From: Macrostomum lignano | Taxonomy: Eukaryota | Assembly (NCBI GenBank): GCA_002269645.1 | Contig: NIVC01000083.1 | Location: forward strand, 186,001-250,000 | Direction: 5' to 3' | DNA length: 64,000 bases | Shown: positions 466 through 64,000 of the stretch, piece by piece | Numbering within the stretch: the first letter of the stretch is position 1 | Layout of the letters: each line of letters begins with the position of its first letter | Program-made: the position numbers and the translations under genes | Notes under the pieces: model-generated | Told to the model about the DNA's origin: nothing | Databases searched by the model: none | What the model saw: the letters and a program-made list of their open reading frames with translations, nothing else

Positions 466-38361
<37,896 letters not shown>

Positions 38362-53109: not shown

Positions 53110-53790
<681 letters not shown>

Positions 53791-53852
53791 AGCGGGATGG
53801 CAGCAGGCATGCATGCATGTGTAGTGTATACTCAGATGTATACTTGGAAAGC

Positions 53853-54179
53853 CTAACGCAACTGCAGGGCCTCGGCAAGCCGTTTGAGATTCTCCACCGC
53901 CGATTCCACCAACAGTCGCAGCTCTGTCGAATCGTTCAAATTTCGTTTCAACGACGGCGTCACGTCTAAGCAGAAGTCCGGGCCGTACTGGGAGAAGAAG
54001 GAGTGCTCGGGGATGTCTTTGTCTAAGTCAACGCCAACAGCCAGGGCAGTGATGGCGGTCCACAGCTTGGCAGTTGACGGGAAATGATAGCCGCCACCGC
54101 CCAGGAGCAGCAGCGGCCGGCGGCTCTGCAGCAGAAGCTTCACGCAGTCCAGGTAGCCCGTCAGGGTGAGGTTAAAGAT
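53853..54179 (-). CDS. HDAC8: HDAC8 exon 3 with stop codon
   Basis: ccgcag|IFNLT...LLLLGGGGYHFPSTAKLW...EALQLR TAG. Confidence 0.92.
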   Translation of the reverse strand: MFNLTLTGYLDCVKLLLQSRRPLLLLGGGGYHFPSTAKLWTAITALAVGVDLDKDIPEHSFFSQYGPDFCLDVTPSLKRNLNDSTELRLLVESAVENLKRLAEALQLR

Positions 54180-56567
54180 CTGCGGCGTGCGGCAATGCGG
54201 GGCAGGGATATAGCTGCGGGCTGGGGCGGCTGTGGAGCCAGGGGTCTGGGAGGCTGGCCCAGCAATTGAGGATCTGGGAGGCTGGCCCAGCAATTGAGGA
54301 TCTGGGAGGCTGGCCCAGCAACTGACACTCTGGGAGGCTGGCCTAGAAACTGAGAATCTGAGAGGCAGGTGGCCCAGCAACTGAGGATCTGGGAGGCTGG
54401 CCCAGCAACTGATGATCTGGGAGGCTGGCCCAGCAACTGAGGATCTGGGAGGCTGGCCCATCAACTGACAGTCTGGGAGGCTGGCCCAGCAACTGAGGAT
54501 CTGGGAGGCTGGCCCAGCAACTGACACTCTGGGAGGCTGGCCCAGCAACCGAGGATCCGGGAGGGTAGCAACGGCCCAGCAACCCAGGATCCGGGAAGGT
54601 AGCAACGGCCCAGCAACTCAGGATCCGGGAGGGTAGCAACGGCCCAGCAACCCAGGATCCGGGAGGGTAGCAACGGCCCAGCAACTCAGGATCCGGGAGG
54701 GTAGCAACGGCCCAGCAACTCAGGATCCGGGAGGGTAGCAACGGCCCAGCAACTCAGGATCCGGGAGGGTAGCAACGGCCCAGCAATCCAGGATACGGCC
54801 CGGCACGCCAACCTTGAACTCGTCTGTTGCCAGGGCATCGGCGCCGCACTGACACACCACGGCGCCGGGATCGAAGGCCTCAAAGGCGGCGTCAATCACG
54901 GCGGCAAAGCTGGCAGCGAACTGGGCATCGCTGACGCCCTCTTTGAGCGGCACATTGACGCTGGCGAAGCGACCGGGCCCTGCGCCGATGTCGTCGGAGT
55001 CGCCGCTGCCAGGAAAGAAGCCGTCAGCCCGATAGTGGAATGACACCTGCCAATCAATCAACGGGTTTGAATAGGCACTTAATGTCAGATTGGTAGATAA
55101 CACTAAACAGAGCACTAAGTCGAATTCTTAGGATGTCAGATAGGGCGCCTGAGACACATTTGTACAATGTCAGATACGGCGCCAAAGACACATTTGTAGA
55201 ATGTCAGATACGGCGCCAAAGACACATTTGTAGAATGTCAGATACGGCGCCTAAGACACATTATCAGAATGTCAGATAGGGCGCTTAAGACACATTATCA
55301 GAATGTCAGATAGGGCGCCAAAGACACATTTGTAGAATGTCAGATAGAGCGCTTGAGATGCATTATTAAAATGTCAGATAGAGCGCCTAAGATACATTTG
55401 TAGAATATCAGATAGAGCGCCTGAGACGCATTCTTAGGATGTCAGATAGGGCGCTTAAGACACATTATCAGAATGTCAGATAGGGCGCCAAAGACACATT
55501 TGTAGAATGTCAGATAGAGCGCTTGAGATGCATTATTAAAATGTCAGATAGAGCGCCTAAGATACATTTGTAGAATATCAGATAGAGCGCCTGAGACACA
55601 TTCTTAGGATGTCAGATAGGGCGCCTGAGACACATTGTAGAATGTCAGATAGGGCGCCTGAGACGCATTCTCAGAATGTCAGATAGGGCGCCAAAGACAC
55701 ATTTTCAGAATATCAGATAGGGCGCCTGAGACGCATTCTCAGAATATCAGATAGGGCGCCTGAGACACATTATCAGAATGTCAGATAGGGCGCCTGAGAC
55801 ACATTTGTAGAATGTCAGATAGAGCGCCTGAGACACATTTGTAGAATGTCAGATAGAGCGCCTGAGATGCATTCTTAGAATATCAGATAGAGCGCCTGAG
55901 ACACATTCTTAGGATGTCAGATAGGGCGCCTGAGACACATTCTTAGAATGTCAGACATGGCGCCAGCACCAACCGTCAGAATCCCGGCAGAGTAGTAGAA
56001 CGCCTCCTCAACCCCGTCGCCGTGGTGCAAATCCAAATCAATGTACATAACCCGATCGTAGCGCTTCTTCAACTCCAACACGCCGTACACGATGTCGTTG
56101 ATGTAGCAGAAACCGGAAGCTTCGTCCCGTTTAGCGTGATGCCAACCGCCAGTCCAGTTGATGGCCACGTCGAACTGTCCAGCTGACAGGGCCTCGGCCG
56201 CAGCCACAGTTGCCCCGGCAACTAACGAAGCGATGTCGAACGCGCCGCGAACTGGCGGACAATCGTAGGCGAAGCCGAATTCTAACAGATCCGAGTCGAG
56301 CTCGTCGGCTTCAAGACCGGCGCTGCTCACTCGTTTTAATGCCGACAGATAGGCCTCGGAGTGAAAGCCGAGCAGTGCAGACTCTGGCAGGGGTTTCAAA
56401 TCCGATAGCACGGTTAATCGGTCCAACAGTTTGTAGGCGTGAATCAGCGAATGCACCAGAACTGATCGGCCGCGCACTTTTGGCAGCTGAGCGCTCAGCT
56501 CAACAAGTTGGCGACTGTAGGCCAGAGCGACTCGCCTGTCGCGTACAGCCGATGCAGGGACTGCCGC
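53853..56567 (-). CDS. HDAC8: Histone deacetylase 8 (class I), 3 exons, 384 codons plus an unlocated initiator
   Basis: Join 56567-55974, 55046-54813, 54179-53853, all phase 0. Motifs YDCP, INWTGGWHHAKRDEASGFCY, YIDLDLHHGDGVEEAF, FFPGSG, GADALA, GGGGY, IPEHSFFSQYGPDF match HDAC8 rather than HDAC1/2/3 (from recall of the family). Confidence 0.93.
54240..54795. repeat. 28-bp and 34-bp related minisatellites filling HDAC8 intron 2
   Basis: GGATCTGGGAGGCTGGCCCAGCAACTGA and GGATCCGGGAGGGTAGCAACGGCCCAGCAACTCA. Confidence 0.92.
54813..55046 (-). CDS. HDAC8: HDAC8 exon 2
   Basis: VSFHYRADGFFPGSG...VNVPLKEGVSD...QCGADALATDEFK|gttggc. Confidence 0.92.
55130..55960. repeat. 34-bp minisatellite filling HDAC8 intron 1 (ATGTCAGATAGGGCGCCTGAGACACATT...)
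   Basis: Direct; 170-bp internal duplication. Confidence 0.93.
55974..56567 (-). CDS. HDAC8: HDAC8 first recognisable exon (no ATG at its start)
   Basis: ttccag|GCG GCA GTC: AAVPASAVRDRRVALAYSRQLVELSAQLPKVRGRSVLVHSLIHAY...ILT|gttggt. Confidence 0.88.
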
Positions 56568-56574
56568 CTGGAAT

Positions 56575-57370
56575 TGGGTTCCGCGTCTGACTGGTTTGGG
56601 TTCCGTGTCTGACTGGTTTGGGTTCCGCGTCTGACTGGTTAGGTTCCGTGTCTGACTGGTTTGGGTTCCGTGTCTGACTGGTTAGGTTCCGTGTCTGACT
56701 GGTTAGGTTCCGTGTCTGACTGGTTTGGGTTCCGTGTCTGACTGGTTGGGTTCCGTGTCTGACTGGTTTGGGTTCCGTGTCTGACTGGTTAGGTTCCGTG
56801 TCTGACTGGTTTGGGTTCCGTGTCTGACTGGTTAGGTTCCGTGTCTGACTGGTTTGGGTTCCGTGTCTGACTGGTTAGGTTCCGTGTCTGACTGGTTTGG
56901 GTTCCGTGTCTGACTGGTTAGGTTCCGTGTCTGACTGGTTAGGTTCCGTGTCTGACTGGTTTGGGTTCCGTGTCTGACTGGTTGGGTTCCGTGTCTGACT
57001 GGTTTGGGTTCCGTGTCTGACTGGTTAGGTTCCGTGTCTGACTGGTTTGGGTTCCGTGTCTGACTGGTTAGGTTCCGTGTCTGACTGGTTTGGGTTCCGT
57101 GTCTGACTAGTTTGGGTTCCGTGTCTGACTGGTTTGGGTTCCGTGTCTGACTGGTTTGGGTTTCGTGTCTGACTGGTTTGGGTTTCGTGTCTGACTGGTT
57201 TGGGTTCCGCGTCTGACTGGTTTGGGTTCCGTGTCTGACTGGTTTGGGTTCCGCGTCCGACTGGTTTGGGTTCCGTGTCTGACTGGTTTGGGTTCCGCGT
57301 CCGACTGGTTTGGGTTCCGCGTCCGACTGGTTTGGGTTCCGTGTCTGACAGGTTTGGGTTCCGTTTCTGA
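56575..57370. repeat. 21/22-bp minisatellite GGTTCCGTGTCTGACTGGTT(TG/A) directly upstream of HDAC8
   Basis: Direct. Confidence 0.95.
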
Positions 57371-57789
57371 CTGCTTGCGTTCTGCTTGCGGGGTAGAAGT
57401 TCGTTATAGTTCCCATGTACAGAAAGTACAGAAGTATCCCATGTACCACGTGTGCAGGCAGAAAATAGCTACCAAAGTCAGTAAGCAGTCAACTATAGAA
57501 AATAAATTAGTTTAACAAACACTATATTGACGCAATTCAAAACAACTTGAGCGGACAGACTTGAATATTTTGAAATGCAATAAAAGTGCCTAAGCTTTAA
57601 TTTAATTGCATTCGATGGACACTAGCCACAGCAACATTAGTCTTACCAAGTGCAAAAAATAACAAAGCACAATTCAAACATTCCTCTAAGCGACATATTT
57701 GTAACATATTTAGATTTCCGACGACAAACGAAGGACGTAATAAAAACATTTAGATTTTAGCGCATGACAGCATAGGCTATTCTGTGAAA

Positions 57790-58010
57790 AATCGATCGAT
57801 TTTTGTATGAAGTCAGATGCTATTTTTAGAAAGATGCCCTATCAGAATCATCGATCGATTTCCACGTGACGTAAGATTCTATATTCAAAAACATCGATTT
57901 ATTTCTGCATGACGTCAGATGCTATATTTAGAATTATCGATCGATTTTCACGTGAAGTCAGATGCTATATTTAGAAACATCGATTGATTTCCTCATGATG
58001 TTAGATAATT
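57790..58010. repeat. Degenerate about 43-bp repeat (ATCGATCGATTT..CACGTGA(A/C)GTCAGATGCTATATTTAGAA)
   Basis: ATCGAT recurs near 57850, 57893, 57936 and 57979. Confidence 0.7.
57898..57903 (-). promoter_or_regulatory. Candidate NARS2 polyadenylation signal AATAAA
   Basis: AATAAA on the minus strand about 210 nt after the NARS2 stop; position only. Confidence 0.3.
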
Positions 58011-58112: not shown

Positions 58113-58706
58113 CTAAGACGGGCAGTGATGAAACGATCTAGGAAACGGCACCAGCTCTTTCACCGACGTGCTACCGCCTACTAGAAATCTGAGAAATCGA
58201 TCCACGCCCAGTCCGTAGCCGCCGTGAGGCGCGCTACCGAATCTGCGCAGTTCCAGATACCAATGCAGACGTTCTACGGAAGACTCCAATAGTTGATGAC
58301 GCTTAATCGACTGGTTCAATCGAGTCGAGTCTGACTCGCGAACGCTACCGCCGAGTACTTCACCAACGCCTGGCAACAATAGGTCGAAACTAGCAGACAG
58401 TCCCGGACTCGATTCTGCGCAGTAGAACGGTCGGGATTTGACTGGGAAATCGGTGACAAAAACGGGAATATTGCCGCACAGTTGGACTAGCGCCAACTCG
58501 TGTTCTCGTCGAAGATCCGACATGCCCATAGTCGGCGGCACTTTGAATTCGCCCGTCTTCTCCATCAGAGCTTTGACAGCATCGGCAAATGTTAAACGTG
58601 CAAAAGATTTAGATAGAAGGTTCTCGATTGCTGACAAATTGTTGCCACTGTCAGAGTCTTCGTGATTAGCTAATTTGGACAGATCCTCAGGACACTGGGA
58701 GATTAC
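58113..58706 (-). CDS. NARS2: NARS2 last exon (motif 3, stop)
   Basis: ttgcag|VISQCPEDL...PFPRSFHHCPS TAG. Confidence 0.92.
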   Translation of the reverse strand, partial: VISQCPEDLSKLANHEDSDSGNNLSAIENLLSKSFARLTFADAVKALMEKTGEFKVPPTMGMSDLRREHELALVQLCGNIPVFVTDFPVKSRPFYCAESSPGLSASFDLLLPGVGEVLGGSVRESDSTRLNQSIKRHQLLESSVERLHWYLELRRFGSAPHGGYGLGVDRFLRFLVGGSTSVKELVPFPRSFHHCPS

Positions 58707-61700
58707 CTGCAAGTTTTCAGTTTGAGTCATTTTATCTGATTCTATCTCTAGTTTGAGTCCAATTCTAACTATCCCTATCCCTAAACTTCTATCCCTATCC
58801 CTAAACTTAGTCAGCTTCCCTGAGTTAAGCCAGATTCTATCCTTAATCTTAGTTGGATTTTATCCTTAAATTAAGCCAGATTCTATCCTTAATCTTAGTT
58901 GGATTTTATCCTTAAATTAAGCCAGATTCTATCCTTAATCTTAGTTGGATTTTATCCTTAAATTAAGCCAGATTCTATCCTTAATCTTAGTTGGATTCTA
59001 TCCTTAAATTAAGCCAGATTCTATCCTTAAATTCAGTTGGATTCTATCCTTAAATTAAGCCAGATTCTATCCTTAATCTTAGTTGGATTTTATCCTTAAA
59101 TTAAGCCAGATTCTATCCTTAATCTCAGTTGGATTCTATCCCTAATTAAGCCAGATTCTATCCTTAATCTTAGTTGGATTCTATCCTTAAATTAAGCCAG
59201 ATTCTATCCTTAATCTCAGTTGGATTCTATCCCTAATTAAGCCAGATTCTATCCTTAATCTCAGTTGGATTCTATCCTTAAATTAAGCCAGATTCTATCC
59301 TTAATCTCAGTTGGATTCTATCCTTAAATTAAGCCAGATTCTATCCTTAATCTTAGTTGGATTTTATCCTTAAATTAAGCCAGATTCTATCCTTAATCTT
59401 AGTTGGATTCTATCCTTAAATTAAGCCAGATTCTATCCTTAAATTCAGTTGGATTCTATCCTTAAATTAAGCCAGATTCTATCCTTAATCTCAGTTGGAT
59501 TCTATCCCTAATTAAGCCAGATTCTATCCTTAATCTTAGTTGGATTCTATCCTTAAATTAAGCCAGATTCTATCCTTAATCTCAGTTGGATTCTATCCCT
59601 AATTAAGCCAGATTCTATCCTTAATCTCAGTTGGATTCTATCCTTAAATTAAGTTGGATTCTATCCTTAATCTCAGTTGGATTCTATCCTTAAATTAAGC
59701 CAGATTCTATCCTTAATCTTAGTTGGATTCTATCCTTAAATTAAGCCAGATTCTATCCTTAATCTCAGTTGGATTCTATCCTTAAATTAAGCCAGATTCT
59801 ATCCTTAATCTCAGTTGGATTCTATCCTTAAATTAAGCCAGATTCTATCCTTAATCTCAGTTGGATTCTATCCTTAAATTAAGCCAGATTCTATCCTTAA
59901 TCTCAGTTGGATTCTATCCTTAAATTAAGCCAGATTCTATCCTTAATCTCAGTTGGATTCTATCCTTAAATTAAGCCAGATTCTATCCTTAATCTCAGTT
60001 GGATTCTATCCTTAAATTAAGCCAGATTCTATCCTTAATCTCAGTTGGATTCTATCCTTAAATTAAGCCAGATTCTATCCTTAATCTCAGTTGGATTCTA
60101 TCCTTAAATTAAGCCAGATTCTATCCTTAAATTCAGTTGGATTCTATCCTTAAATTAAGCCAGATTCTATCCTTAAATTAAGCCAGATTCTATCCTTAAT
60201 CTTAGTTGGATTCTATCCTTAAATTAAGCCAGATTCTATCCTTAATCTTAGTTGGATTCTATCCTTAAATTAAGCCAGATTCTATCCTTAAATTCAGTTG
60301 GATTCTATCCTTAAATTAAGCCAGATTCTATCCTTAATCTCAGTTGGATTCTATCCCTAATTAAGCCAGATTCTATCCTTAATCTCAGTTGGATTCTATC
60401 CTTAAATTAATCCAGATTCTATCCTTAATCTCAGTTGGATTCTATCCTTAAATTAAGCCTGATTCTATCCCAAATTTCAGTTGGATTCTATCCTTAAATT
60501 AAGCCAGATTTTATCCTTAATCTCAGTTGGATTATTAGGGATCCAATTTTTCCGGATTCTATTTCTAAATTAATCTAGTCCATCCCTAAACTTAGCCAGA
60601 GTCTATCCCTCAATTAATCTAGAGTCTATCCCTAAATTTAGTCAATCCTATCCCTAAGAAAAAAGCAGATAAAATACAGGCACAAATCTTACACAATTAG
60701 ACGCAGTTTTCAAAAGCCATTCAACGTGATTGCACAGAGCATCTGTGGAATCTAATTCCGTAGCCTCAGCCTCTAGCATAGAGAACTCGGCCAGGTGATA
60801 AGTAGTGAGGGATTTCTCTGCTCGAAACGCCCTTCCTAAACAGTAGACGCGAGACAGGCCCAGAGCCAGCGCCTCCAGGTGCAGCTGCGAGGACACGGTC
60901 AGATGAACCGGCGAGCGGAAAAATGACTCCGAATCTGCTAGGCGAAAAGTTTCGCCGGCGCCCTCGCAGTCGTTGGTGGTTAGTACTGGGGCTTCTACCT
61001 GCCCGGGAGAATGATGGAAGTTGATGCTTTATACATGTAGGGTAGAATTCTTAGAAGCAGTTAACGAGATAGACGGAGAAGGGAGACGGGTGGAAGAGAG
61101 GGAGAGAAGGGTAGAGGGGGAGGGTAGAAGAGACGGGTAGAGGGGTAGAAAAGATGGGGAGAGGGGTAGAAGAGGGGGAGAGGGGTAGAAGAGAGGGGAG
61201 AGGGGTAGAAGAGAGGGGAGAGGGGTAGAAGAGGGGGGAGAGGGGTAGAAGAGAGGGGGGAGAGGGGTAAAAGAGAGGGGGGAGAGGGGTAAAAGAGAGG
61301 GGGAGAGGGGTAGAAAAGACGGGGAGAGGGGTAGAAGAGAGGGGGAGAGGGTAGAAGAGATGGGGAGAGAGTAGAAGAGACAGGCAGAGGGGTAGAAGAG
61401 AGGGGGAGAGGGGTAGAAGAGACGGGGAGAGGGGTAGAAGAGAGGGGGAGAGAGGTAGAAGAGACGGGGAGAGAGTAGAAGAGAGGGGGAGAGGGTAGAA
61501 GAGACGGGGAGAGAGTAGAAGAGACGGGGAGAGGGGTAGAAGAGACGGGGAGAGAGTAGAAGAGAGGGGGAGAGGGTAGAAGAGACGGGGAGAGAGTAGA
61601 AGAGAGGGGGAGAGGGTAGAAGAGACGGGGAGAGAGTAGAAGAGACGGGGAGAGGGGTAGAAGAGACGGGGAGAGAGTAGAAGAGAGGGGGAGAGGGGTA

Positions 61701-64000
61701 GAAGAGGGGGAGAGGGGTAGAAGAGACGGGGAGAGAGTAGAAGAGAGGGGGAGAGGGGTAGAAGAGGGGGAGAGGGGTAGAAGAGGGGGAGAGGGGTAGA
61801 AGACGGGGAGAGAGTAGAAGAGACAGGGTAGAACAGACAAGTAGGCGGCAGAAGAGCATGGACCATAATAGCGCTCTGCCGATATGTATCGAAAACCAAT
61901 ACAGACAGGCAATCAGACTTCACCTCAAGATAGTGGCGCTCGTCAAGTGCCGACCGCAGCGCCCGGTTCAATGCGGCGCGCAGCCGGCAGACGGCCTGAA
62001 AGCCGGCCAGTCTGGGACGCAGATGCGGACTCTGTCTAGCGGTGTCCGGCCGCTGCTCCTGGTGGAAGCTCAGACCGGATGCCCGGTCGGCCGGGCCGGT
62101 CACAGCGAGACTGCTAGCTTGAAGTTCCAAGCCGTTAGCGGCTCGATCAGTGGCGGAGAGGCGGCCGACAACTCTCAAGCAGGTGTCCGCTGAGACATCG
62201 GCGGGCAGGAGCTCGGATGGCGAGACTACAATCTGAGTTGCAAAGGTTTTTATTGGTTATACTATATGTAACTGCAGTACTGTACTACTGTATGCATACA
62301 ATTGTACCATTGATTGCGTAGTTACCACTCCTTATCCTTTTGTAACTAACCGCAGCTCCAGTTTCTACTCATAGCTCATGCATACCTAGCCACCTCACTA
62401 CTTCTACACTTCACTCACTACCTCTTCACCTCATCACTCACTACTTCTCCACTTCATTCACTACCTCTCCACATCATTCACTACCTCTCTACCTCACTCA
62501 CTACTTCTCCACCTCACTCACTACCTGTCTACTCACTCACTTCCTCCCCACCTCACTCACTACCTCCCACCTCACTCACTACCTCCCACCTCACTCACTA
62601 CCTCTCAATCTCACTCACTACCTCTCCACCTCACTCACTACCTCTCCACCTCAATCACTACCTCTCCACCTCAATCACTACCTCTCCACCTCACTCATTA
62701 CTTCTCCACCTCACTCACTACCTCTTCACCTCACTCACTACCTCTTCACCTCACTCACTACCTTTCCATCTCATTCACTACCTCTCTACCACTACCTCTC
62801 TACCTCTCTACCTCACTCTCTACCTCTCACCTCACTCACTACTCTCCACCTCACTCACTACCTCTCCACCTCACTCACTACTCTCCACCTCACTCACTAC
62901 CTCTTCACCTCACTCACTATCTCTCCACTTCACTCACTACCTATTCACCTCACTCACTACTTCTCCACCTCACTCACTACCTCTCCACCTCACTCACTAC
63001 CTCTCCACCTCACTCACTACCTCTCCACCTCACTCACTACCTCTCCACCTCACTCACTACCTCTCCACCTCACTCACTACCTCTCCACCTCACTCACTAC
63101 CTTTCCATCTCATTCACTACCTCTCTACCACTACCTCTCTACCTCTCTACCTCACTCTCTACCTCTCACCTCACTCTCTACTCTCCACCTCACTCACTAC
63201 CTCTCCACCTCACTCACTACCTTTCCATCTCATTCACTACCTCTCTACCACTACCTCTCTACCTCTCTACCTCACTCTCTACCTCTCACCTCACTCACTA
63301 CTCTCCACCTCACTCACTACCTCTCCACCTCACTCACTACTCTCCACCTCACTCACTACCTCTTCACCTCACTCACTATCTCTCCACTTCACTCACTACC
63401 TCTTCACCTCACTCACTACTTCTCCACCTCACTCACTACCTCTCCACCTCACTCACTACCTCTCCACCTCACTCACTACCTCTCCACCTCACTCACTACC
63501 TCTCCACCTCACTCACTACCTCTCCACCTCACTCACTATCTCCCACCTCACTCATTACCTGTCTACTCACTCACTTCCTCTACACCTCACTCACTACCTC
63601 TCAATCTCACTCACTACCTCCCACCTCACTCAATACCTGTCCACTCACTCACTTCCTCTCTCATTCACTACCTCTCTCTCACTCACTACCTCTCTCGTTC
63701 CCTACCTCTCTCATTTACTACGAGCTACCTCTTTCATTCACTTTCACTCTTTCGTTCACCATCTCATTCTACTTATTGACTACTTTTATTTCTAAAGTAT
63801 ACCGTATGCATCTTAACTACCAAATCAACCCCATCTTCCAGCATGCTGAATTTATAGATCCCGCATACTAGATAACAAGATTAAGAACTAAACTAACCTG
63901 CAGGGTTTTATGAGTAGTACCATCGCCCAACTCGATGAAGCTAACTTTTTTCTGACGTCTGAGGCTTCGCACCCAGCCTACTAAACTGACTTCACCAGTT
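58113..64000 (-). CDS. NARS2: Asparaginyl-tRNA synthetase, mitochondrial type, 5'-partial, 4 exons
   Basis: Join >64000-63898, 62232-61924, 60998-60693, 58706-58113, all phase 0. OB-fold GWVRSLRRQKKVSFIELGDG, PHLRPR, TTNDCEGAGETF, LTVSSQLHLE, FRAEKS...HLAEFSMLEAE, GGSVRE, WYLELRRFGSAPHGGYGLGVDR, PFPR. Confidence 0.92.
58770..60655. repeat. 23-bp units alternating as a 46-bp dimer, filling a NARS2 intron
   Basis: GATTCTATCCTTAA followed alternately by ATTAAGCCA and TCTCAGTTG. Confidence 0.95.
60693..60998 (-). CDS. NARS2: NARS2 exon (class II motifs 1-2)
   Basis: gggcag|VEAPVLTTNDCEGAGETF...KTASNC|gtaaga. Confidence 0.9.
61070..61840. repeat. GA-rich minisatellite (GGGGAGAGGGGTAGAAGAGA) filling a NARS2 intron
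   Basis: Direct. Confidence 0.92.
61924..62232 (-). CDS. NARS2: NARS2 exon
   Basis: actcag|IVVSPSELL...LELQA...SPHLRPR...HYLE|gtgaag. Confidence 0.88.
62390..63720. repeat. 20-bp minisatellite CTCACTCACTACCTCTCCAC filling a NARS2 intron
   Basis: Direct. Confidence 0.93.
63898..64000 (-). CDS. NARS2: NARS2 exon (partial, anticodon-binding OB fold)
   Basis: TGEVSLVGWVRSLRRQKKVSFIELGDGTTHKTLQ|gttagt. Confidence 0.88.

What the first reader, a model, noticed from the sequence alone, without database searches (positions are those of the whole stretch)
56470..56600. HDAC8 has no start codon of its own; a phase-0 acceptor fits a spliced-leader AUG
Seen: the conserved HDAC8 frame runs up to ttccag|GCG GCA GTC at 56567. 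The first in-frame Met is about 175 codons downstream, past essential residues. The ORF track opens this frame only at an internal GTG (56477). Established: flatworm spliced-leader (SL) exons end in a conserved AUG that can act as the initiator Met. Inference: SL addition here gives MAAVPASAVRDRRVALAYSRQLV..., an N-terminus close in length to other HDAC8 proteins, so the protein would be translatable only after trans-splicing. Competing model: a cis-spliced 45-nt exon at 57416-57372 (ATG GGA ACT...GCA|gtcaga, MGTITNFYPASRTQA), also phase 0 but with a weaker donor resembling the GTCAGA in the adjacent satellite.
Basis: partly seen in the sequence, partly recalled or inferred. Interest (0 to 1): 0.82.

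Follow-up and report, generated by a model that had tools for sequence, protein, structure and literature searches.

The report
HDAC8 start codon donated by spliced leader
This flatworm (Macrostomum lignano) HDAC8 gene has no start codon of its own and almost certainly borrows the AUG at the end of the trans-spliced leader RNA, a mechanism already known in flatworms, so it is a clean example and not a new kind of thing.

Summary
On the minus strand a three-exon HDAC8 gene (56567-55974, 55046-54813, 54179-53853) begins right after ttccag|GCG. Upstream the frame runs only into a 22-bp satellite and a stop, with no ATG. The first in-frame Met is residue 174, past the catalytic His-His.

The window is Macrostomum lignano: NCBI PAA91663.1 differs by one residue over all 384. 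That protein is annotated "partial" and starts exactly at AAVPAS.

Published work gives the M. lignano spliced leader (SL) as ...TTGCATG and the trans-splice acceptor motif as [T/C]TNCAG. TTCCAG fits, and it is the only such motif between the upstream gene's stop and the first HDAC8 exon. The Mlig_3_7 annotation cuts genes at SL-read peaks, which explains the annotated start.

An asparaginyl-tRNA synthetase gene ends 1.5 kb upstream on the same strand, an operon-like layout. SL-AUG plus exon 1 gives MAAVPAS..., with an N-terminus two residues shorter than human HDAC8.

One paralogous locus reads ATG where the others read CAG. This may be real, or an artefact of RNA-seq polishing.

I could not reach any SL-containing read. 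The mechanism has been known since Cheng et al. 2006, so this is a new member of a known kind and of modest interest.

The parts
56568..56573 (-). TTCCAG 3' splice acceptor, the proposed SL trans-splice site (the exon starts at 56567)
   Evidence: Sequence. Fits the published M. lignano trans-splice motif [T/C]TNCAG. It is the only such motif between the AsnRS stop and exon 1. The NCBI CDS of paralog g2 starts on the base after it.
55974..56567 (-). HDAC8 exon 1 (594 nt, phase 0, no ATG before codon 174); donor ACG|gttggt
   Evidence: identical exon structure in PAA91663.1.
54813..55046 (-). HDAC8 exon 2 (ttggcag|GTG ... AAG|gttggc)
53853..54179 (-). HDAC8 exon 3, ending in TAG
56574..57373 (-). 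22-bp satellite (~37 units, CCAGTCAGACACGGAACCCAAA in gene sense) filling most of the presumed outron / intercistronic region
   Evidence: TRF. Copy number is ~15 units in L001 and ~200 in L002.
57372..57416 (-). Candidate 45-nt cis exon (ATG...GCA|gtcaga) of the competing model; judged not used
   Evidence: Present. Its donor is the first satellite unit. Both differences in L001 are non-synonymous. It is absent from all annotated models.
56535..56539 (-). Possible minor alternative acceptor gacag|G (the exon would start at 56535); the SL AUG would then be out of frame (MASRSGLQSPTC*)
   Evidence: The annotated CDS of paralog g1 starts one base after the equivalent site; translation.
58113..58730 (-). 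Last exon and stop codon of the upstream asparaginyl-tRNA synthetase gene on the same strand; the gene runs past 64000
   Evidence: Pfam PF00152 and NCBIfam asnS, matching to the profile end. Called gene in L001/L002. N-terminal exon at 63999-63871.
57898..57903 (-). AATAAA, candidate poly(A) signal of AsnRS, 210 nt after its stop
   Evidence: pattern match only.
58162..58163 (-). Cryptic GT donor (TCG|gtgaaag) inside the AsnRS last exon, used by older ML2 gene models to fuse AsnRS in frame to the 56567 acceptor
   Evidence: P0239 reads ...FLVGGSTS|AAVPAS; coordinates.

Best explanation
This is the Macrostomum lignano HDAC8 gene, a downstream, operon-like neighbour of an asparaginyl-tRNA synthetase gene. 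Its pre-mRNA carries a satellite-filled outron ending in TTCCAG. The 35-nt spliced leader (CGGTCTCTTACTGCGAAGACTCAATTTATTGCATG) is trans-spliced onto base 56567. The last three SL bases, AUG, then sit in phase 0 with GCG GCA GTC and serve as the initiator codon, giving MAAVPASAVRDRRVALAYS..., a 385-residue HDAC8. Without trans-splicing, no active enzyme can be made from this copy. Shown here: there is no genomic start codon; the species is M. lignano; the acceptor fits the published motif; frame and N-terminal length fit; the annotated 5' end sits on the acceptor; the ORF is under purifying selection. Inferred, not shown: SL addition at this exact site, and ribosomal initiation at the SL AUG.
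For: Species: 384/384 residues covered, with one difference from NCBI PAA91663.1 of M. lignano; DNA is 92-96% identical to two Mlig_3_7 loci. No in-frame ATG between the upstream stop and codon 174. The SL ends in ATG and the trans-splice motif is [T/C]TNCAG (PMC8629364); the site is TTCCAG and is unique in the intergenic region. Mlig_3_7 gene boundaries were cut at peaks of SL-containing reads and ORFs were called with TransDecoder (PMC5730564). The resulting CDS is '5' partial' and starts on the first base after CAG; if the transcript reached further upstream, the open frame would have added ...FQ. None of eight independent M. lignano models has a Met start. With the SL Met, residue 15 aligns with human HDAC8 residue 17. 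The three copies differ by 9, 9 and 4 synonymous versus 1, 2 and 1 non-synonymous codons in the three pairwise comparisons, so the ORF is maintained. The same-strand AsnRS stop lies 1545 nt upstream, of which ~950 nt are tandem repeats; this is within the repeat-adjusted 1-kb operon criterion of PMC8629364. In paralog L002 the CAG is replaced by ATG, which matches the SL's last bases at exactly this position. Use of the SL AUG as initiator is established for flatworms (Cheng et al. 2006, as cited in PMC9851317, and PMC12582326).
Against: No SL-containing read, EST or cDNA for this gene could be reached. A search with the N-terminal 83 residues found no transcript-derived fragments. No paper or supplement names Mlig014527 or Macrostomum HDAC8. 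The annotated start is indirect evidence that depends on my reading of the pipeline description. The paralog g1 annotation starts 33 nt further down, after gacag|G, where the SL AUG would be out of frame, so more than one site may be in use. An in-frame CTG (codon 15) could in principle serve as a non-AUG start.
Confidence: 0.82

Rival explanations
1. A cis-spliced 45-nt first exon (57416-57372, MGTITNFYPASRTQA) supplies the ATG, and the satellite is an ordinary intron removed from GCA|gtcaga to ttccag|GCG.
For: The segment exists, is in phase 0 and is intact in all three copies. This gene's real donors (GTTGGT, GTTGGC) are also non-consensus, so a weak donor alone does not exclude it.
Against: The donor is just the first of ~37 identical satellite units. 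A transcript containing this exon would have given a complete ORF with Met, yet the evidence-based annotation is 5' partial and starts at the acceptor. Both differences in L001 are non-synonymous, whereas the CDS shows about 9 synonymous to 1 non-synonymous. It would add 15 residues with no counterpart in HDAC8 relatives. An out-of-frame ATG lies 27 nt upstream of it.
Confidence: 0.05
2. HDAC8 is made as an in-frame fusion with the upstream AsnRS. A cryptic donor in the AsnRS last exon (58163) is cis-spliced to the 56567 acceptor, so the AsnRS ATG is the start.
For: Two ML2-assembly gene models (P0239, P0125) are such fusions, and P0239 joins ...GGSTS directly to AAVPAS. Flatworm acceptors are often shared between cis- and trans-splicing (PMC12582326).
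Against: The fusion deletes the conserved AsnRS C-terminus, which matches the asnS profile to its end. The later evidence-based annotation keeps two separate genes in both loci. Gene predictors that require an ATG are expected to create such fusions when the downstream gene has none. At most this is a minor isoform.
Confidence: 0.05
3. The copy in the window is a non-functional duplicate whose 5' end was lost to the satellite, or it uses a non-AUG start (in-frame CTG at codon 15) or the downstream Met 174.
For: M. lignano is a hidden polyploid with redundant copies (PMC10468722). No ATG is present.
Against: All copies share the same 5' structure and an intact ORF, with a strong excess of synonymous differences. 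A product starting at Met 174 would lack the His-His dyad. The gene is in the transcript-based annotation.
Confidence: 0.06

Closest known systems
Flatworm mRNAs that use the SL 3'-terminal AUG as initiator methionine (Cheng, Cohen, Ndegwa & Davis, J Biol Chem 2006; called 'slORFs' in PMC9851317)
   Same: The SL ends in AUG, the acceptor is in phase 0 with a conserved ORF, and there is no usable genomic AUG. In Schistosoma mansoni the SL AUG is in frame in 28% of trans-spliced transcripts, and more than 40 cDNAs need it.
   Different: Different species (a free-living macrostomorph) and a different gene. Neither the SL junction nor translation from the SL AUG has been demonstrated here.
[quoted passage not shown] 2017; Ustyantsev & Berezikov 2021)
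   Same: A same-strand upstream gene, a repeat-inflated intergenic distance, a TTNCAG acceptor, and a gene conserved with human.
   Different: Polycistronic transcription of AsnRS-HDAC8 was not seen here. A separate promoter within the 740 nt of unique sequence upstream of the satellite is not excluded.
Human HDAC8 / Schistosoma mansoni HDAC8 (PDB 1T64; smHDAC8 entries such as 6HSF, 7P2S)
   Same: Class I zinc deacetylase fold, 45-48% identity to vertebrate HDAC8, catalytic residues present, similar N-terminal length.
   Different: The vertebrate and the recombinant schistosome proteins begin with a Met that I take to be genome-encoded (from memory, not checked here). Here the Met codon is not in the gene.

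Membership tests
SL-AUG-initiated flatworm mRNA (slORF) | The organism has an SL RNA whose exon ends in AUG | tested here: met
   Window = M. lignano; SL CGGTCTCTTACTGCGAAGACTCAATTTATTGCATG (PMC8629364). The SL gene itself is not in the window.
SL-AUG-initiated flatworm mRNA (slORF) | [quoted passage not shown] | tested here: met
   TTCCAG|G at 56573-56567 fits [T/C]TNCAG and is unique in the intergenic region.
SL-AUG-initiated flatworm mRNA (slORF) | The SL AUG is in frame with the conserved ORF, with no stop in between | tested here: met
   ATG + 56567... translates to MAAVPASAVRDRRVALAYSRQ; the alignment to HDAC8 starts at residue 15.
SL-AUG-initiated flatworm mRNA (slORF) | No genomic in-frame AUG that could give a functional protein | tested here: met
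   Upstream there is a stop and no Met; the first Met is residue 174, after the His-His dyad.
SL-AUG-initiated flatworm mRNA (slORF) | Transcripts with the SL joined at this acceptor | not testable with these tools
   Indirect only: the 5'-partial CDS starts on the base after CAG in an annotation built from SL-read peaks. No reads or cDNA were reachable.
SL-AUG-initiated flatworm mRNA (slORF) | Translation actually initiates at the SL AUG | not testable with these tools
   Needs ribosome profiling, N-terminal proteomics or a reporter assay.
HDAC8 (class I Zn-dependent deacetylase, Pfam PF00850) | Hist_deacetyl domain above the Pfam cut-off | tested here: met
   251 bits against a cut-off of 27.9, residues 34-322.
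HDAC8 (class I Zn-dependent deacetylase, Pfam PF00850) | Closer to HDAC8 than to HDAC1/2/3 | tested here: met
   PDB HDAC8 chains at about 1e-109 versus HDAC1/2 at about 1e-90; the database hits are named HDAC8.
HDAC8 (class I Zn-dependent deacetylase, Pfam PF00850) | Catalytic His-His dyad, zinc ligands D/H/D and the catalytic Tyr | tested here: met
   GGWHHAK, DLDLHHGDG, CGADAL and GGGGYH all align with the human motifs. The residue roles come from established HDAC8 structural work, not tested here.
Flatworm operon (polycistronic unit resolved by SL trans-splicing) | Same-strand upstream gene within 1 kb after subtracting repeats | tested here: met
   From the AsnRS stop at 58113 to the acceptor at 56567 is 1545 nt; tandem repeats take 800 + 151 nt. 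Criterion from PMC8629364. The arrangement is kept in L001 and L002.
Flatworm operon (polycistronic unit resolved by SL trans-splicing) | A single precursor transcript spanning both genes | not testable with these tools
   Only a hint: older gene models fuse the two genes.

The most novel reading that the evidence does not exclude
The CAG-to-ATG difference between recent paralogs (window and L001: ttcCAGgcg; L002: ttcATGgcg) is real and not a polishing artefact. It would then record a switch between an SL-donated and a genome-encoded initiator codon at the same three bases. One possible route is that a reverse-transcribed trans-spliced mRNA wrote the SL's AUG back into the genome.
Probability: 0.3. 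Interest if true: 0.6.

Novelty: new member of a known kind. Interest (0 to 1): 0.3.

Why it matters
It is a tidy case in which a conserved, essential enzyme cannot be translated unless its mRNA is trans-spliced. That explains why every automatic gene model for it is 'partial', runs into a satellite, or is fused to the neighbouring tRNA synthetase. Practically, M. lignano proteins that begin directly after a TTNCAG acceptor should have a Met added, and should not be treated as truncated. Transgenes or knock-ins at such genes must keep the acceptor. If the paralog with a genomic ATG is real, the pair offers a natural experiment on how start codons move between the SL and the genome.

Tried and rejected
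1. Direct transcript evidence. A protein search with the M-prefixed N-terminal 83 residues found nothing. The two longer searches returned only genome-derived M. lignano models, with no transcript assemblies.

2. Literature and supplements. 'Mlig014527' and 'Macrostomum + HDAC8' gave no relevant paper. The supplements of PMC5730564 and PMC5173321 do not list the gene, and PMC8629364 has no supplements held. Wasik et al. 2015 is not held.

3. SL sequence in the window. No SL gene, and no SL tail of 8 nt or more, in the window, L001 or L002. There is therefore no local SL locus and no retro-inserted SL.

4. Conservation of the candidate cis exon across paralogs. This was uninformative, because the whole intergenic region is about 97% identical.

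5. The AsnRS 5' end, to see whether the upstream gene is itself trans-spliced. It lies beyond base 64000.

6. Pseudogene reading. Rejected on the synonymous excess and the intact ORFs.
Full report
**What is in the sequence.** The gene lies on the minus strand. Reading down from 56567, the sequence is acccaattccag|GCG GCA GTC CCT....

The spliced coding sequence has three exons:
- exon 1, 56567-55974, donor ACG|gttggt;
- exon 2, 55046-54813, ttggcag|GTG ... AAG|gttggc;
- exon 3, 54179-53853, ccgcag|ATC ... TAG.

Together they make 1155 nt, that is 384 codons plus a stop.

Upstream of 56567 the same frame stays open only through satellite-encoded sequence (...T*PVRHGTQTSQTRNLTSQTRNPNQSDTEPKPVRRGTQFQ|AAVPAS) and contains no Met. 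The first in-frame Met is residue 174 (RVMYIDLDLHH). The mechanical ORF list opens the frame at GTG 56477. The satellite is a 22-bp unit repeated about 37 times at 56574-57373.

**What the gene is.**
- Pfam gives Hist_deacetyl at 251 bits.
- PDB HDAC8 chains match at about 1e-109, against about 1e-90 for HDAC1/2.
- The motifs GGWHHAK, DLDLHHGDG, GADAL and GGGGYH align with the human catalytic and zinc-binding motifs.
- A protein starting at Met 174 would lack the His-His dyad.

**Which organism.**
- The full-length query hits NCBI PAA91663.1, [quoted passage not shown]. It is 384 aa, covers 100% of the protein and differs at one residue.
- Two Mlig_3_7 loci were fetched: L001 (NIVC01000082.1, copy g2) and L002 (NIVC01001635.1, copy g1). 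They align with the window at 92-96% identity over the unique flanks.
- The three copies differ by 9, 9 and 4 synonymous against 1, 2 and 1 non-synonymous codons in the three pairwise comparisons. The reading frame, including its first 44 codons (no difference in the first 132 nt), is therefore being maintained.

**None of the M. lignano models has a start codon.** There are eight models:
- PAA91663.1 and A0A1I8FBH4 start exactly at AAVPAS.
- PAA65595.1 starts at RVALAY.
- Two ML2 models read through into the satellite (R/SGTQFQAAVPAS), and one does so in a shifted frame.
- Two ML2 models are fused to the upstream tRNA synthetase.

**Trans-splicing in this species.**
- Ustyantsev & Berezikov (PMC8629364) give the single 35-nt SL as CGGTCTCTTACTGCGAAGACTCAATTTATTGCATG.
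- They report [T/C]TNCAG as the top motif at trans-splice acceptors.
- They estimate that 30% of genes are trans-spliced.
- They define operons by a repeat-adjusted intergenic distance below 1 kb, and note that repeats inflate the distances within operons.

The site here is TTCCAG. On the minus strand between the upstream stop (58113) and 56400, the motif occurs only at this site and once inside exon 1, where it is out of frame.

Wudarski et al. (PMC5730564) built the Mlig_3_7 annotation as follows. They trimmed and mapped SL-containing reads, cut transcriptional units at the resulting peaks (the TBONE pipeline), and then ran TransDecoder. A 5'-partial CDS that begins on the very first base after CAG (L001 position 6001) is what that pipeline yields when the mRNA starts at a trans-splice site and the ORF has no Met. 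Had the transcript reached further upstream, the open frame would have added at least ...FQ. This is my reading of the pipeline description, not a read-level observation.

**The resulting protein.** SL-AUG joined to 56567 translates as MAAVPASAVRDRRVALAYSRQ.... Residue 15 of that protein aligns with residue 17 of human HDAC8, so the N-terminal length fits.

**Context.**
- The 205-codon ORF ending at 58113 on the same strand is the C-terminal exon of an asparaginyl-tRNA synthetase. It matches Pfam PF00152 and the NCBIfam asnS profile through to the profile's end.
- That gene runs beyond base 64000.
- The distance from its stop to the HDAC8 acceptor is 1545 nt, of which 951 nt are tandem repeats. 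This meets the published operon criterion.
- An AATAAA lies 210 nt after the stop.
- The same gene order holds in L001 and L002. The satellite there has about 15 and about 200 units, so the spacer ranges from 1.15 to 5.2 kb.

**Mechanism.** The best explanation is that HDAC8 is matured by SL trans-splicing at TTCCAG|G, probably from a precursor shared with AsnRS, and that the SL's terminal AUG is its initiator. That flatworm SL AUGs can serve in this way was shown for Schistosoma mansoni by Cheng et al. 2006. [quoted passage not shown] The conserved terminal ATG of flatworm SLs is also noted in PMC12582326, PMC7653826 and PMC10468722.

**Rivals.**
1. The 45-nt cis exon. Its gtcaga donor is merely the first of about 37 identical satellite units. 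It is absent from every model, both of its differences in L001 change the amino acid, and it would add 15 residues that have no counterpart in HDAC8 relatives. On the other side, this gene's two real donors (GTTGGT, GTTGGC) are also non-consensus, so donor weakness alone is not decisive.
2. A cis-spliced AsnRS-HDAC8 fusion, from the cryptic donor TCG|gtgaaag at 58163 to the 56567 acceptor, as in the ML2 model P0239. It removes the conserved AsnRS C-terminus and is best seen as a predictor's way round the missing ATG, or at most as a minor isoform. It does show that independent software picked the same acceptor.
3. A pseudogene or a non-AUG start. This is disfavoured by the synonymous excess and the intact ORFs.

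**An unexpected detail.** At the three bases that are CAG in the window and in L001, L002 reads ATG (aattcATGgcggcagtc). That ATG is in frame and matches the last bases of the SL. The copies differ by only about 1% in exon 1, so two adjacent changes producing exactly ATG at exactly this spot are very unlikely by chance (roughly 1e-5). I see three explanations and cannot separate them:
- a real variant;
- conversion from a cDNA of the trans-spliced mRNA;
- an assembly artefact, since Mlig_3_7 was polished with Pilon using RNA-seq as well as genomic reads (PMC5730564), so SL-bearing reads could have overwritten the acceptor.

Each of the three implies that an AUG sits directly before GCG GCA in the mRNA or the coding sequence, so each supports the main reading.

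The annotated CDS of this copy starts 33 nt further down, one base after gacag|G (window equivalent: exon start 56535). An SL AUG joined there would be out of frame (MASRSGLQSPTC*). This hints at a minor, unproductive alternative site.

**What is missing.** I saw no SL-containing read, cDNA or peptide. The databases I could reach hold no transcript-derived fragments of this gene, and no paper or held supplement mentions it.

**Verdict.** The mechanism is well known and the public annotation already embodies the trans-splice boundary, so this is a new member of a known kind and of modest interest. The paralog ATG is the one point worth a follow-up.

Noticed in passing
L002:5965-5967 (equivalent to window 56570-56568): Paralog Mlig014527g1 has ATG where the window and L001 have the CAG acceptor. 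It is in frame and identical to the SL's last bases. It may be a real variant, a cDNA conversion, or an artefact of Pilon polishing with RNA-seq.
   Followed up: partly
window 56574-57373; L001:5665-5995; L002:~1560-5960: The 22-bp outron satellite varies from about 15 to about 37 to about 200 units among three otherwise ~97% identical copies. The distance between the two genes therefore ranges from 1.15 to 5.2 kb.
   Followed up: partly
window 55124-55964, 54245-54798, 53131-53792: Each HDAC8 intron carries its own tandem array: a 34-bp unit x25 in intron 1, and 34-bp and 28-bp units in intron 2. A GA-rich array follows the stop codon.
   Followed up: no
window 55973-55968 and 54812-54807 (minus strand): Both cis introns use GTTGG donors (gttggt, gttggc) and not the GT[G/A]AG consensus reported for M. 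lignano.
   Followed up: no
window 57842-57992: A 43-bp tandem repeat between the AsnRS stop and the satellite. Its units contain TGACGTCA-like and CACGTG-like motifs and the AATAAA at 57903. It could be 3'-UTR or transposon sequence, or a promoter-like element for HDAC8.
   Followed up: no
window 58163 to 56567 (minus strand): Older ML2 gene models (UniProt A0A1I8IXP0, A0A1I8FNT6) fuse AsnRS in frame to HDAC8 through a cryptic donor in the AsnRS last exon. This is probably a predictor's workaround for the missing ATG.
   Followed up: partly
window 56535-56539 (minus strand): A possible secondary acceptor gacag|G, where the g1 annotation starts. An SL AUG joined there would be out of frame and stop after 12 codons.
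   Followed up: partly
window 63999-63871 (minus strand): An N-terminal OB-fold exon of the AsnRS gene (TGEVSLVGWVRSLRRQKKVSFIELGDG...). The gene's 5' end lies outside the window, so I could not check whether it is itself trans-spliced.
   Followed up: no
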